Virus record (IMG/VR): IMGVR_UViG_3300046787_000408 | Coordinates: 124,001-188,000 of that record | Strand: one strand, 5' to 3' | DNA: 64,000 bases | Part shown: positions 23,823 to 27,564 of the stretch, one piece after another | Layout: each line of letters begins with the position of its first letter | How positions within the stretch are numbered: the stretch's first letter is position 1 | The notes under the pieces: model-generated | What the model was told of the DNA's origin: nothing | What the model saw: the letters and a program-made list of their open reading frames with translations, nothing else | The model's database searches: none | Translations under genes and position numbers: made by a program

Positions 23823-24289
23823 AGAAGATCTACTATGTCAAAGAAGGTCGCAGGTACAAACCTGTGGCCGAGTACGACAACGATCTCATGGATAGTTTTC
23901 ACAAGGGCAATCATCTTGTGATGTGCTATCCAGGTGGTACTAGTCGCAGGTTCGATATTGATCCAGACCTGGCACCCATGATTGCGGCAGGGCGAGTGGC
24001 TGAAGATGCTATGTGCAAGGCCATGATGGATGCTAGTGAATTAAGACCACAGCGAACTCCTCTTACAGAAGGACAACGCAAGGCCTGGAAGAAATTGGCC
24101 AAAGAGTTTGGCGATGAGCTCTGCACCTTGCAAGGATCTAGCACACGTGATATTGTGGAAGCTGGAGTAAAGGCCATGCAGGAAGAAGCACTCAAACTAA
24201 TGCAACACCAAGCAGTTCGTGAGGCCTACGAACAGTTTCAGCTAGTATGTGAATTGACCAAAAATACCAAAACAGTTGACACCCGCTGA
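23819..24289 (+). CDS. Hypothetical protein
   Basis: 156 aa, ATGA-coupled. Confidence 0.7.
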   Translation: MKKIYYVKEGRRYKPVAEYDNDLMDSFHKGNHLVMCYPGGTSRRFDIDPDLAPMIAAGRVAEDAMCKAMMDASELRPQRTPLTEGQRKAWKKLAKEFGDELCTLQGSSTRDIVEAGVKAMQEEALKLMQHQAVREAYEQFQLVCELTKNTKTVDTR

Positions 24290-24304
24290 TTGTTTGAGTA
24301 TAAT
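24276..24304 (+). promoter_or_regulatory. Consensus sigma70 promoter
   Basis: TTGACA-17-TATAAT, with no credible ORF start for ~190 nt downstream. Confidence 0.85.
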
Positions 24305-24310
24305 TACTGT

Positions 24311-24479
24311 GCATGCTGGAAGTATATCGTGGTTGCGGGGGGTTTAAAAACCCGTGGCTGTCCGCGTAATGGCCACAAGATGTGACACTGACCTCGACGA
24401 AAGTCAAAACCGGCTGGTACCCGGGAGTAAGCCAAGGGGATAAAAACAGTGATAAGTGTCTTGTACATGTTAACATTTT
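24311..24479 (+). ncRNA. Candidate structured non-coding RNA, family unidentified
   Basis: GC-rich intergenic stretch behind a consensus promoter; stems GTGGCT/GGCCAC, ACAAGA/TCTTGT, CACTG/CAGTG, GAC-GAAA-GTC, GGCT/AGCC, GCATG/CATGT. Confidence 0.5.
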
Positions 24480-24493
24480 GATCTCTAAATATT

Positions 24494-24781
24494 ATGTCAA
24501 ATTCCCTAAACTCACTTAAAGAAACGGCTTCCAGCATGCACCCTCATCGTGTGCTGTTTGAACTGGTTACAGTACAAGACTGGTACAAGGTTATTCACGA
24601 AGCCAATGCCTTGTACGGTTCTCACAACTGGAAAGGTCAGCCGCGAGTCAAGCGCAAACTAGAGCAAAATCACTGGCTGAAAAAGACAGTCCCAGTATGG
24701 TTTGATGTACCTGATCCTGCGTTTGCAACCTGGGTGTCTGTTAAGCACAGCTTGATCGCCAAGAACGTGGTCACTAAATAA
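24494..24781 (+). CDS. Hypothetical protein (distant LRW-family-like C-terminus)
   Basis: TAAATA 2 nt upstream of ATG; WFDVPDPAFATWVSVK. Confidence 0.65.
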   Translation: MSNSLNSLKETASSMHPHRVLFELVTVQDWYKVIHEANALYGSHNWKGQPRVKRKLEQNHWLKKTVPVWFDVPDPAFATWVSVKHSLIAKNVVTK

Positions 24782-24784
24782 TCA

Positions 24785-26377
24785 ATGTTTCTTAGTTATA
24801 TCACTTTGGCTGTAGCACTGAGCCTGTCAGTTATTGCTGCCTACTACTCAATTGCAGGCCTGGCTGCTATTTTTGCTGCGGCCGTGATTCCCATTGTTGT
24901 AATGGGATCAATCCTAGAACTAGGCAAAGTTGTGGTCACACTGTGGCTGCATGAGTATTGGCGGCAGTGCCGTTTTCTCATGAAAATGTACTTGGTGCCT
25001 GCTGTGGCAGTGCTAATGCTAGTGACCAGCATGGGCATCTTTGGTTTCTTGAGCAAAGCACACTCAGACCAAAGCCTAGTGTCAGGCGATGTACAAAGCA
25101 AAATTGCAGTCTACGACGAAAAGATCAAGGTATCACAGGACAATATAGATGTTAATCGCAAAGCACTTAAACAACTCGATGAGGCGGTGGACCAAGTCAT
25201 GGGCCGCTCGAGTTCAGAAACGGGTGCAGACAAAGCCGTTGCTATACGCAAATCCCAAGCGAAAGAAAGAACTAGACTACTGGCTGAAATTGCAGCCGAG
25301 CAGAAAACAATTAGTGATCTCAGACAAGAACGAGCTCCCATTGCGGCTGAAGTACGCAAGGTTGAAGCTGAAGTAGGTCCTATCAAGTACATTGCTACAC
25401 TGATCTACGGTGACAACCCAGATGCCAACTTGCTGGAAAAAGCAGTGACATGGGTTATTATGTTGTTGGTTATAGTGTTTGATCCTTTGGCCATCATGAT
25501 GCTGTTGGCTGCAACAGAAAGTCTAAAGTGGGAAAAGCAAAGACTGTTTGACTTGCTCAAGATGCCTGTGCCGGAGCCAGAACCTGATCTTAAAGTGGTC
25601 AATCAAATGCTGGCCGCCGCGGCAACGATTCCTGAACCACAGGAGCCGGTTGTAGAGCCAAAGTCTGGGCCCATGAAGTTTTTTGATCCAGGCGAGCATC
25701 CCAAAGACTACGACGAGACTGAGGTGCCGGTGCCAGAACCTGTACCAGAGAAAACCCTACTAGAACAGCATCCGTATCTTGGACTAGGATTTTCAAACTT
25801 TAAAGATCTCAAGCCAATGCCGTATATACCCGAAAGAAAACTAGAAGTATATTCGGGCAACCCTGATGATTTCAAAGAGCCATGGAGTGAAGAAGACCGG
25901 CTACGTTTGGCCGCAGTTATGGAAACATTCCTTGACAAGAATCAAGATGAAGATCCTGAACTAAGCGATGACCATCCCAGTGTCAAAGCAGCCATGGTCA
26001 AATGGAAATTGGCCAACCCAGGTGCCACTCTCAAAGAACAACGTGCAATGTTTGCTCGTGGCGAGATTGCTGAATTACCTTGGCTAGCTCTAATTGATAA
26101 CAATGCTAGTGAATCAGGTTTTGGGTTGACATTGCCAGCTACTGCTCACAAAGGCGATACCTGGGTATTAACTAGTACATTGCCTAATCGGGTATATAAG
26201 TTTAATGGTAACAAGTGGATTTCAGTTGACAAAACTCAAACAGATAACTATACTTACAACGAAGCATACCTGGACCACCTAATAGCCAAGCTAGAATCTG
26301 GTGAATACGATATAGAATTGCTCAGCAGTAATGAGCAAGAACAGATTACTCAACGTCTACAAAAGAAAACAATATGA
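24785..26377 (+). CDS. Membrane protein: N-terminal TM helices, coiled coil, Pro/Glu-rich linker
   Basis: Hydrophobic N-terminus, heptad region, VFDPLA TM segment, PEPEP repeats. Confidence 0.7.
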
Positions 26378-27564
26378 AATCAAACGACTCTATCTACAAT
26401 TGCAGTTTCTGTGGCAAACACAAAGATGTTGTGACCAAACTAATCGTGGGCGTAAATGTCGCCATCTGTAACGAATGTGTGGACCTGTGCCAAAACTTAC
26501 TGGTAGACACCCCGGTAGAAATCACAGCCCCCAGCACACCCAGCCTGGATCCGCGCAAGATTCGTGAGCATCTAGACCAGTATGTGATTGGACAGGATCA
26601 AGCCAAGATCCTGTTGAGTGTGGCTATTGCCAATCACTACAAGCGCATTGCCAATCAAGATCCCGAACACGAAATTGAAAAAGCCAACATTCTCATGCTT
26701 GGCCCCACAGGCTCGGGCAAAACACTTTTGGCACGTACCGTGGCTCGGTATCTTGACGTGCCGTTTGTGATTGCAGATGCCACCAGCTTGACCGAAGCTG
26801 GATACGTAGGCGACGATGTGGAAAGCTTGATCTCAAGATTGTTTGCTGCATCAGGCGGTGACATTGAAAAGACACAACGTGGTATTGTGTTTGTGGATGA
26901 GATTGACAAGATCAGTCGCAAAAGCGAAGGCACTAGTATCACTCGTGATGTGTCCGGAGAAGGTGTGCAACAAGCCTTGTTAAAATTGGTAGAAGGTACC
27001 AAGTGCAGAGTCATGCCCACAGGCGGACGCAAACATCCTTCGGGGGAAACAGTAGAAATTGATACTACCAATATCTTGTTTATTGCAGGCGGCGCATTTG
27101 TAGGCATGGAAAATATTGTCAAGAGCCGTGTGAAAGGCACCAGTATTGGTTTCAGTGCTGATGTACGTACAGATGAAAAAGCTCAGCTGAGCCAGACCAC
27201 TCCTGATGACTTGGTACGCTTTGGCTTGATCCCTGAATTTGTGGGACGTTTTCCAGCTTGGGTTGCACTGCAAGAACTGGACAAAACAGATCTTGTGCGT
27301 ATTCTTAAAGAAGTCAAACACAACTATGTGAGTCAGTATCAGTGGTTGTTCAAGCAAGATGAAGTTGAGCTGGAGTTCTCAAAAGACAGCTTGGACTTGA
27401 TCGCTGAGCGCACTATCAAGAACAAAACAGGCGCACGTGGCCTGCACAGTGAACTAGAGCGTGTGTTGTTACCGCACATGTACAATCTAGCTCGCTATCG
27501 CTCAGATGGTATCAAGCATGTGGATATTGATCAAGCTCTGGTAAATAGTCCCAAGGAACTCTAA
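26374..27564 (+). CDS. clpX: ATP-dependent Clp protease ATP-binding subunit ClpX
   Basis: C4 zinc finger CSFC...[16 protein letters not shown] pore loop, [22 protein letters not shown] loop, TGARGL. Confidence 0.97.

What the first reader, a model, noticed from the sequence alone, without database searches (positions are those of the whole stretch)
24276..24490. Promoter-driven structured non-coding RNA candidate
Seen: a TTGACA-17-TATAAT consensus promoter fires into ~185 nt with no credible ORF, and the next gene has its own TAAATA. The stretch is GC-rich and folds by eye into nested stems: closing GCAUG/CAUGU; GGGUU-UAAA-AACCC; GUGGCU/GGCCAC, whose loop CCGC could pseudoknot with upstream GCGG; ACAAGA/UCUUGU and CACUG/CAGUG enclosing a junction of CCUC/GGGG, GAC-GAAA-GUC and GGCU...AGCC. 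I do not recognise it as tRNA, SRP, 6S, tmRNA or a known ribozyme. Inference: an early, abundant phage sRNA, ribozyme or protein decoy.
Basis: partly seen in the sequence, partly recalled or inferred. Interest (0 to 1): 0.65.

Follow-up and report, generated by a model that had tools for sequence, protein, structure and literature searches.

The report
Conserved pseudoknotted leader RNA, jumbo phage
A perfect bacterial-type promoter in an uncultured freshwater jumbo phage fires into a 183-base non-coding leader whose multi-helix, pseudoknotted fold is kept by compensatory mutations in about 100 related phages, always just ahead of the same small gene, so it is a real RNA element not found in Rfam whose function is still unknown.

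Summary
The promoter is real: TTGACA-17-TATAAT at 24276-24304 scores 12/12, and it is also 12/12 in 74 of 113 distinct relatives. The 183 nt between the predicted start (about 24311) and the next gene (ATG 24494) are non-coding.

Across about 100 distinct homologues from IMG/VR and metagenomes, eight helices are supported by covariation: P1, P0, HA, H2a, H2b, P3, P4 and H5. P1 is a long-range helix; HA is a pseudoknot.

- Core: 25 pairs, 93% paired against 79% in shuffles and 33-45% when partners are slid.
- P1: 97% paired, with compensatory changes in all five pairs.

Rfam 15 and ARAGORN find nothing. The element is single-copy in its genome. A sequence-pattern scan of 185,579 prokaryotic species genomes gave only chance matches. 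It always lies directly 5' of one 95-106-aa gene (p95), which heads a conserved p95 / membrane protein / ClpX operon. In most relatives the last hairpin carries the gene's SD and AUG.

In one metatranscriptome, contigs lie on the leader and essentially nowhere else in 2.8 kb.

Verdict: a new family of structured 5' leader RNA, most likely cis-regulatory and aptamer-like. A stable trans-acting RNA is not excluded.

The parts
24276..24304 (+). Sigma-70-type promoter: -35 TTGACA (24276-24281), 17-nt spacer, -10 TATAAT (24299-24304)
   Evidence: 12/12 match. A homologous promoter scores 12/12 in 74 and 11/12 in 18 of 113 distinct relatives.
24311..24315 (+). Predicted transcript 5' end, conserved GCAUG (start inferred 7 nt after the -10)
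   Evidence: G1, C2 and A3 are invariant in 74 aligned relatives. The start itself is inferred; the first RNA contig begins at 24322.
24335..24339 (+). P1 5' strand (GCGGG), pairs with 24361-24365
   Evidence: Long-range helix. In 71 distinct main-group sequences all 5 pairs show compensatory changes and 97% of cells are paired, on a MAFFT alignment. Complementary strands are also present in the window's clade.
24340..24353 (+). P0 hairpin GGGUU-UAAA-AACCC. Its last CC is the start of the conserved CCGUGGC. It is much longer in most relatives.
   Evidence: 95% paired against 86% shuffled, and 6 of 8 pairs have compensatory changes. The base pair G-C changes to A-U seven times.
24356..24359 (+). 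HA 5' strand GGCU (pseudoknot with 24430-24433)
   Evidence: HA was not part of the covariance model, yet it is 99% paired, with GC/GU/AU at one pair and AU/UA at another. RNAalifold picks it independently.
24361..24365 (+). P1 3' strand (UCCGC)
24366..24385 (+). Conserved unpaired stretch (GUAA...; consensus UAGGUUGCGA), fold unresolved
   Evidence: Near-invariant columns. No consistent local helix was found.
24386..24390 (+). H2a 5' strand CACUG (pairs with 24447-24451)
   Evidence: three of five pairs carry compensatory changes (CG/AU/GU, UA/GC).
24392..24395 (+). H2b 5' strand CCUC (pairs with GGGG 24436-24439)
   Evidence: all 4 pairs have compensatory changes; 94% paired.
24396..24405 (+). 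P3 hairpin GAC-GAAA-GUC (GNRA loop)
   Evidence: 99.7% paired and all 3 pairs covary. Stem length varies, with insertions of up to 25 nt in distant relatives.
24406..24409 (+). Invariant A-rich joining strand (UCAAAAC in the family)
   Evidence: Three of these A's (positions 55-57 of the element) are invariant in 105 sequences and a fourth is nearly so.
24410..24424 (+). P4 hairpin CCGG-CUGGUAC-CCGG
   Evidence: 4 of 5 pairs have compensatory changes. Loop and length vary, up to a 32-nt insertion.
24425..24433 (+). Conserved GAGUA plus HA 3' strand AGCC (24430-24433)
   Evidence: G76, U77, A78 and G80 are invariant. Pairing shown.
24436..24451 (+). H2b 3' strand GGGG (24436-24439), linker AUAAAAA, H2a 3' strand CAGUG (24447-24451)
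24452..24468 (+). AUAAG (family consensus AAAGG, which is the SD in most relatives) plus hairpin H5 GUGU-CUUGU-ACAU (24456-24468)
   Evidence: 99% paired, 3 of 4 pairs covary. In most relatives the 3' strand follows the AUG start. The hairpin is kept in the window although the start has moved.
24467..24481 (+). Mini-ORF AUG UUA ACA UUU UGA (MLTF*), present only in the window's closest relatives
   Evidence: L001, L021, L175, L178. Function not tested.
24494..24781 (+). p95: 95-aa gene always found behind the RNA. No SD upstream in the window.
   Evidence: No Pfam or PHROG match. AF2 model has a generic ferredoxin-like fold.
24785..27564 (+). Rest of the conserved operon: 530-aa membrane / coiled-coil protein (24785-26377) and a ClpX homologue (26374-27564)
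   Evidence: p530 follows p95 in 157 of 159 loci with room. ClpX zinc finger plus AAA_2 domains.

Best explanation
The region encodes the 5' leader of an early operon (p95, a membrane protein, ClpX) of an uncultured freshwater jumbo phage.

Proposed course of events:
1. Host sigma-70 RNA polymerase starts at about 24311 (inferred).
2. The first ~160 nt fold into one compact RNA (shown by covariation):
   - Helix P1 closes a junction that holds hairpin P0 and the single-stranded GGCU.
   - A second junction, closed by H2a/H2b, carries hairpins P3 and P4.
   - The two halves are locked together by the pseudoknot HA (GGCU/AGCC).
   - Hairpin H5 follows 4-5 nt after H2a.

The fold looks like an aptamer: about 45 invariant or nearly invariant nucleotides, most of them in unpaired joining strands, an A-rich joining strand, and peripheral stems of freely variable length.

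Inferred mechanism: the folded leader acts in cis on its own mRNA. The strand AAAGG between H2a and H5 is the ribosome-binding site in most relatives, and the AUG sits in H5. Whatever stabilises the fold (a small ligand, or a protein, possibly p95 itself) would therefore set how often ribosomes start on p95 and, through it, on the operon. The fold probably also makes the 5' part of the message unusually stable.

The window's lineage has moved the start codon 27 nt downstream but keeps the whole fold.
For: Shown:
- Perfect promoter, conserved in relatives.
- Non-coding: no 3-periodicity in length; only short ORFs.
- Covariation for eight helices: 93.4% paired against 78.6% shuffled and 33-45% slid, with 19 of 25 pairs showing compensatory change; P0; P1; HA recovered independently by RNAalifold.
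- Distant members keep the core while P3 and P4 carry 21-32-nt insertions.
- Strict linkage to p95: 175 loci by nhmmer. By an RNA-only pattern, 64 of 66 have p95 within 60 nt and the other two lie at contig ends. A distant member also has it.
- Single copy in the 300-kb genome.
- SD and AUG lie inside or beside H5 in most relatives.
- The operon is conserved.
- Other promoters of this phage have leaders of only ~25 nt with AGGAG.
- The leader is as conserved as the adjacent coding DNA: 71.5% against 68.5% identity to the window.
- RNA-library contigs from two strains lie on 24322-24528 and essentially nowhere else in 2.8 kb.

Inferred: the transcription start point, cis action, control of translation, and any ligand or protein partner.
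Against: - No ligand, protein partner or switch was demonstrated.
- No conserved alternative pairing that would free or occlude the SD was found. The CCUN strand of H2b covaries away from anti-SD complementarity.
- H5 is only 4-6 bp and weak.
- H5 and the AAAG strand are retained in lineages where they no longer hold the start codon. They therefore serve the fold, not only initiation.
- The motif is tied to one gene family only, which is unusual for metabolite riboswitches.
- Metatranscriptome contigs covering the leader but not the ORFs fit a stable separate RNA at least as well. Contigs cannot show ends, strand or level.
Confidence: 0.5

Rival explanations
1. The leader is, or gives rise to, a stable non-coding RNA that works in trans. 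It could be an abundant early phage RNA that binds a host or phage protein (possibly forming a particle with p95), released by processing or by stopping shortly after the p95 start.
For: - In the one informative RNA library, three contigs from two strains lie only on 24322-24528, while 2.6 kb of flanking genes are empty apart from a 48-nt piece of a more distant relative.
- The fold is far more elaborate than a simple operator: eight helices, including a pseudoknot and a long-range helix.
- The promoter is consensus-strength.
- H5 and the AAAG strand are conserved even where they no longer carry the start codon.
Against: - No terminator-like site between the RNA and p95.
- Never found away from p95.
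- One copy per genome.
- In most relatives the RNA overlaps the SD and AUG.
- Contigs cannot show RNA ends or abundance, and a second RNA run showed nothing on the leader.
Confidence: 0.25
2. The fold acts on transcription or mRNA survival rather than on translation. It could be a promoter-proximal RNA that modifies RNA polymerase (processive antitermination, as the put RNAs of phage HK022 do; this comparison is from my own knowledge). Alternatively it could be a 5' stabiliser that protects the long operon mRNA from RNase E.
For: - The conserved sequence begins at the predicted +1 (GCAUG invariant).
- It heads a ~3.3-kb operon.
- It is retained when the start codon moves.
- The leader is preferentially recovered in RNA contigs.
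Against: - No terminators to be overridden were identified inside the operon; a near-consensus promoter lies before clpX instead.
- The size and pseudoknotted junction architecture exceed what 5' stabilisers need.
- No similarity to any described antiterminator RNA in Rfam.
Confidence: 0.13
3. The RNA is a self-cleaving ribozyme of a new class that processes the 5' end of the operon mRNA.
For: - Pseudoknotted core with many invariant unpaired nucleotides.
- The order of strands (HA-5', H2-5', hairpins, HA-3', H2-3') is loosely reminiscent of nested-pseudoknot ribozymes.
Against: - No hit to any ribozyme model in Rfam 15, even at E<=10.
- The topology differs from HDV-like ribozymes: both hairpins lie before HA-3'.
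- The RNA contig 24322-24429 runs uninterrupted through the 5' half.
- No positive evidence for cleavage.
Confidence: 0.05
4. The conservation is not due to an RNA function. It reflects a promoter-proximal DNA element or an overlooked small protein.
For: Short ORFs exist on both strands. In most relatives the 3' 25 nt of the conserved block is the N-terminus of p95.
Against: - Compensatory base-pair changes in 30 of 40 tested pairs, strand-specific.
- Indels are not in multiples of three.
- Variable-length stems.
Confidence: 0.02

Closest known systems
Orphan riboswitch candidates tied to one gene family (for example the yjdF motif, PMC4793209)
   Same: - A complex, covariation-supported fold in a 5' UTR.
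- Highly conserved junction nucleotides and variable peripheral stems.
- Almost exclusive association with one downstream gene of unknown function.
- Ribosome-binding site next to the closing helix.
   Different: - No sequence or structure match (Rfam negative).
- Found only in phages, not in cellular genomes.
- No ligand known.
- No conserved switching helix found.
Autogenous translational operators of phage genes, for example the T4 gene 32 pseudoknot leader (as summarised in PMC10690425)
   Same: - A pseudoknot-containing leader directly 5' of a phage gene.
- It overlaps the translation start.
- It is gene-specific.
   Different: - Much larger: about 160 nt with eight helices.
- p95 has no recognisable nucleic-acid-binding domain and only a generic ferredoxin-like fold.
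- Binding was not tested.
Candidate structured RNAs predicted from IMG/VR (8,495 'DNAVirus_X' csRNAs, PMC10690425)
   Same: Same data source (IMG/VR) and the same kind of object: a covarying intergenic motif within 25 nt of a gene start.
   Different: Those models are at most 151 nt long, with a median of 65. Whether part of this RNA is among them could not be checked, because the supplementary files are not held. It is not described in the paper's text.
Promoter-proximal cis-acting RNAs that modify RNA polymerase (HK022 put; from my own knowledge)
   Same: Located immediately downstream of a strong early phage promoter, and acts (if at all) on its own transcript.
   Different: put consists of two simple stem-loops of about 70 nt. 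There is no sequence or structural similarity, and no evidence of terminators downstream here.

Membership tests
Any Rfam 15 family (4,227 models, including riboswitches, ribozymes, 6S, SRP, RNase P and phage motifs) | Covariance-model score at or above the family's gathering threshold | tested here: not met
   No hit in the whole window. Only noise (E about 1, well below gathering scores) in 24150-24600 and in 14 relatives' loci.
tRNA / tmRNA / tRNA-like | Cloverleaf or tmRNA fold detectable by ARAGORN | tested here: not met
   No genes found in the window or in 8 related loci. The tRNA-like-looking GUUCAAUGG is in fact one strand of helix P1.
Riboswitch (generic kind) | Conserved structured aptamer supported by covariation | tested here: met
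Riboswitch (generic kind) | Located in the 5' UTR of the gene it controls, with an expression platform overlapping the SD or a terminator | tested here: inconclusive
   The position is met in all loci. The SD and AUG are adjacent to or inside H5 in most relatives. No conserved mutually exclusive pairing and no terminator were found.
Riboswitch (generic kind) | Specific binding of a small-molecule or ion ligand | not testable with these tools
   Needs in-line probing, ITC or similar.
Riboswitch (generic kind) | Association with genes of a coherent metabolic or transport function, usually several gene families | tested here: not met
   Only ever upstream of p95, a protein of unknown function.
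Autoregulatory protein-binding leader | The downstream gene product binds its own leader | not testable with these tools
   p95 has a generic ferredoxin-like fold (Z <= 6.3) and no known RNA-binding domain.
Autoregulatory protein-binding leader | Structure overlaps the ribosome-binding site of the regulated gene | tested here: met
   In most relatives H5 includes part of the SD and follows the AUG. This is not so in the window's own lineage.
Independent sRNA gene | Own promoter and own terminator or defined 3' end, separable from neighbouring genes | tested here: not met
   A promoter is present, but no terminator-like site lies between 24304 and 24959 on the + strand. The RNA is never separated from p95. 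The 3' end cannot be read from contigs.
HDV-like / other self-cleaving ribozymes | Family-specific nested pseudoknot topology and catalytic core; self-cleavage | tested here: not met
   No Rfam ribozyme model matches, and the strand order differs. Cleavage itself is not testable here.

The most novel reading that the evidence does not exclude
The RNA is the aptamer of a new, phage-only riboswitch or ribonucleoprotein class. It would sense a host metabolite or a phage protein and so time expression of an early ClpX-containing operon. That would be the first complex regulatory RNA family known to be specific to jumbo phages. Alternatively, it could be a new ribozyme class.
Probability: 0.25. Interest if true: 0.8.

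Novelty: new member of a known kind. Interest (0 to 1): 0.6.

Why it matters
Structured regulatory RNAs of phages are poorly charted, and almost nothing is known for the huge uncultured freshwater phages. Here the family is large (over 100 distinct sequences), the covariation is very clear, and the architecture is intricate: two junctions tied together by a pseudoknot and a long-range helix.

The RNA is driven by a consensus promoter and heads an operon that ends in a phage ClpX. It is therefore a well-defined, directly testable candidate for a new riboswitch, RNA-protein switch or stable early RNA.

Because the promoter is a perfect sigma-70 consensus, the whole cassette can be tested in laboratory bacteria even though neither phage nor host is cultured.

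Tried and rejected
- **Rfam:** gathering and permissive thresholds, on the window and on relatives. Nothing found.
- **ARAGORN:** nothing.
- **Single-sequence folding:** the MFE is not better than shuffles. The MFE structure (-45.6 kcal/mol) differs from the comparative one (-23.6 kcal/mol).
- **MAFFT plus RNAalifold on whole leaders:** uninformative.
- **Local hairpin in the 'Hb' segment** (core columns 9-31): register inconsistent, 21-53% paired. Rejected in favour of P1.
- **Closing helix 5' AGAG / 3' CUCU around the whole leader:** 4 invariant pairs, 11 + 8 uncompensated changes, and 32% pairing at the next position. Rejected.
both sides are essentially invariant, and the pairing fails in the L002-type relatives.
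- **Switch in which CCUN pairs alternately with the H2b 3' strand or the SD:** rejected, because CCUN covaries with its H2b partner while the SD stays AAAGG.
- **5'-terminal hairpin GCAU...GUGC / AUC-AAAGA-GAU:** inconclusive, 62-99% per pair with little covariation.
- **p95 function:** no Pfam or PHROG match. The Atlas gives only viral hypothetical proteins. Foldseek gives weak ClpS-like rows at E about 1. VIA-align gives a generic ferredoxin-like fold, Z <= 6.3.
- **Cultured phages:** no DNA match and no p95 match.
- **Prokaryotic genomes:** the pattern gave 93 hits, about the number I estimated from the pattern's specificity, and none is a real member.
- **Supplement of PMC10690425:** not held.
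- **RNA run X21:** only fragments of distant relatives on neighbouring genes; uninformative.

Full report
**What is at the coordinates.**
The window is bases 124001-188000 of a 299,983-bp IMG/VR virus record, about 81% complete. It is a jumbo phage from freshwater metagenomes; every sequencing run that holds the stretch and names a habitat is lake, freshwater or freshwater sediment.

TTGACA (24276-24281) - 17 nt - TATAAT (24299-24304) is a 12/12 sigma-70 consensus, the only perfect one in the 64 kb. The upstream gene ends at 24289 and the next gene (95 aa, here 'p95') starts at 24494. If transcription starts 7 nt after the -10 (at 24311, inferred), the leader is 183 nt.

Only short ORFs overlap it. 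The region is not notably GC-rich: 0.50 against about 0.46. Its minimum-free-energy fold is no more stable than shuffled sequence (z = +0.47).

**Homologues.**
Searching IMG/VR and metagenome contigs with the two flanking proteins gave 254 loci. Iterated nhmmer found a ~137-nt conserved block, window 24352-24486, in 175 of them (109 distinct sequences). It is always on the coding strand and directly 5' of the p95 homologue. Of the 14 p95-search loci without it, about five lack upstream DNA and most of the rest look like divergent relatives.

The promoter is conserved too: 12/12 in 74 and 11/12 in 18 of 113 distinct upstream regions. It is followed by an invariant GCA(U)G.

Core length ranges from 113 to 167 nt with no 3-periodicity, so the block is not coding. 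It is as conserved as the adjacent coding DNA: 71.5% against 68.5% identity to the window.

**Structure.**
I built a covariance model from helices visible in the alignment (R1) and re-aligned 99 distinct sequences (A3). Results for 25 pairs:
- 93.4% of cells are standard pairs, against 78.6% when partners are shuffled and 33-45% when partners are slid by 1-3 columns.
- 19 pairs show compensatory double changes.

The helices, in window coordinates:
- H2a: CACUG 24386-90 / CAGUG 24447-51
- H2b: CCUC 24392-95 / GGGG 24436-39
- P3: GAC-GAAA-GUC 24396-405
- P4: CCGG-CUGGUAC-CCGG 24410-24
- H5: GUGU 24456-59 / ACAU 24465-68
- HA (pseudoknot): GGCU 24356-59 / AGCC 24430-33

HA was not in the model, yet it is 99% paired, with GC/GU/AU and AU/UA exchanges. 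RNAalifold selects it on its own.

Two more helices join the 5' part to the core, both tested on plain MAFFT alignments:
- P0, a hairpin whose base uses the CC of the invariant CCGUGGC. Window: GGGUU 24340-44 / AACCC 24349-53. It is 95% paired and 6 of 8 pairs are compensated.
- P1, a long-range helix between the strand just 5' of P0 and the segment after GGCW. Examples are GUUCA/UGAAC, GUCUA/UAGAC, GUUCGA/UCGAAC, GUCUUC/GAAGAC and GUUUGC/GCAAAC. It is 97% paired and all five pairs are compensated.

Distant relatives (L010, L012, L013, L323) keep the unpaired core sequences (CCGUGG, GUAA, AGGUGNGGCAC, AAAAC, GGGAGUAWGCC, AAAG + hairpin). Their P3 and P4 carry insertions of 21-32 nt. That is the usual signature of a functional RNA core with dispensable peripheral stems.

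Not supported:
- GUGGCU/GGCCAC, found only in the window's nearest relatives and competing with HA;
- ACAAGA/UCUUGU;
- the closing GCAUG/CAUGU;
- my own candidate closing helix AGAG/CUCU.

**Context.**
An RNA-only DNA pattern recovered 66 true elements from IMG/VR. In 64 of them p95 follows within 60 nt, and the other two are at contig ends. A similar, slightly stricter pattern gave only chance matches in one genome each of 185,579 prokaryotic species. No cultured phage encodes p95. The element occurs once in its own genome.

p95 is followed by a 530-aa membrane / coiled-coil protein in 157 of 159 loci, and then by a ClpX homologue with a ClpX zinc finger and an AAA_2 domain. The genes upstream of the promoter vary.

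The phage's other strong promoters fire into ~25-nt leaders with a canonical AGGAG. This long leader is therefore exceptional within its own genome.

**Relation to translation.**
In most relatives the invariant AAAGG that follows H2a is a well-spaced Shine-Dalgarno sequence. The p95 AUG sits at the loop / 3' strand of H5, and the protein has an 11-12-residue N-terminal extension (MSV.IE...).

In the window's lineage, and in the most distant lineages, that AUG is absent. p95 starts 27 nt further on (24494) without any SD. Yet H5 (with compensatory changes), the AAAG strand and the following GAUCUCU are retained. The window and its three closest relatives have a 4-codon mini-ORF there (24467-24481).

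H5 and the AAAG strand therefore belong to the RNA's own fold. In most lineages they double as the ribosome-binding site.

**Expression.**
In one freshwater metatranscriptome (X20, Logan contigs) three contigs lie on 24322-24429, 24401-24508 and 24401-24528. One is identical to the window; two come from an L175-like relative. The other 2.6 kb laid are empty except for a 48-nt conserved piece.

Contigs cannot prove transcription, ends or abundance, and a second RNA run was uninformative. Even so, uniform DNA carry-over would not single out the leader. This is suggestive evidence that the leader RNA is more abundant or more stable than the rest of the operon mRNA.

**Interpretation.**
- Firm (about 0.9): this is a genuine, conserved, structured non-coding RNA, and a family absent from Rfam 15.
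- Most likely (about 0.5): it acts in cis as an aptamer-like leader. The supporting facts are the strict physical and evolutionary coupling to one gene, the RBS placed at the exit of the closing helix, and the absence of a terminator. A bound factor (a small ligand, or a protein, possibly p95) would then set translation and/or stability of the p95 / membrane-protein / ClpX mRNA.
- Main rival (about 0.25): a stable early RNA acting in trans or as an RNP. This is favoured by the RNA-contig pattern, the complexity of the fold, and its retention after start-codon relocation.
- Smaller shares: polymerase-modifying or mRNA-stabilising roles (about 0.13) and a new ribozyme (about 0.05).

p95 gives no functional lead. 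It has no Pfam or PHROG family, and its AF2 model (pLDDT 79) is a generic ferredoxin-like beta-alpha fold.

**Novelty.**
The closest known things are single-gene orphan riboswitch candidates such as yjdF (PMC4793209) and phage autoregulatory pseudoknot leaders such as T4 gene 32 (summarised in PMC10690425). A large screen of IMG/VR predicted 8,495 short candidate RNAs (PMC10690425). Whether a piece of this one is among them could not be checked.

I rate it a new member of a known kind (structured 5' leader RNA) with an unusually rich and well-supported architecture.

Noticed in passing
window 16844, 17085, 18449, 34410, 36578, 36909, 37497, 37992, 45466, 50032, 50979, 61612, 62088, 62373, 63294 (all + strand): Many near-consensus promoters of the form TTGAC[CT]-17-TATAAT. 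Several are followed by the same ~30-nt leader ATACACATAGCAAAGCAAAACAGGAG... This is a repeated promoter-plus-short-leader cassette that seems to drive much of this part of the genome from host-type promoters.
   Followed up: partly
window 24456-24496; L005:2960-3010, L088:4555-4600, L002:2960-3005: The p95 start codon has moved between lineages. In most relatives the AUG sits inside hairpin H5 with an AAAGG SD, giving an 11-12-residue N-terminal extension. The window's lineage and the most distant lineages start 27 nt downstream with no SD. The direction of the change is not resolved.
   Followed up: partly
window 24467-24481: A four-codon mini-ORF (MLTF*, or MLKF* in L021, L175 and L178) ends 12 nt before the SD-less p95 AUG. 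This raises the possibility of termination-reinitiation coupling in this sub-lineage only.
   Followed up: no
L088:4395-4420 and most main-group loci (5' end of the leader): A conserved purine-rich, SD-like AAGGAGAU / AAAGAGAU lies 8-16 nt from the predicted 5' end of the RNA. It shows no convincing pairing partner and its role is unexplained. The window has GGAAGUAUAU instead.
   Followed up: partly
window 26226-26254: A near-consensus promoter (TTGACA-17-TATACT, 11/12) lies inside the 3' end of the 530-aa gene, about 120 nt before the ClpX homologue. ClpX may therefore also be transcribed on its own.
   Followed up: no
window 24785-26377: The N-terminal ~250 residues (membrane plus coiled coil) of the 530-aa protein have homologues in cultured jumbo and large phages: Pelagibacter phage Mosig at 43% identity, and Xanthomonas XacN1 and Xoo-sp13, Stenotrophomonas, Ralstonia RsoM2USA and Salicola SCTP-2 at lower identity. 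All are annotated as hypothetical.
   Followed up: no
between the p156 homologue and the promoter in related loci (e.g. L025:3445-4400, L027:3445-5640): The distance from the upstream 156-aa gene to p95 is about 200 nt in 42 loci but 700-2400 nt in about 30 others. Variable genes are inserted just upstream of the conserved promoter, so the promoter-leader-operon unit behaves as a module.
   Followed up: no
L323:600-680 (- strand): In a distant relative a strong intrinsic terminator (AAAAGCCACUUUGCAGUGGCUUUUUUG) lies immediately upstream of the leader's promoter. This confirms that the leader begins a new transcription unit there.
   Followed up: no
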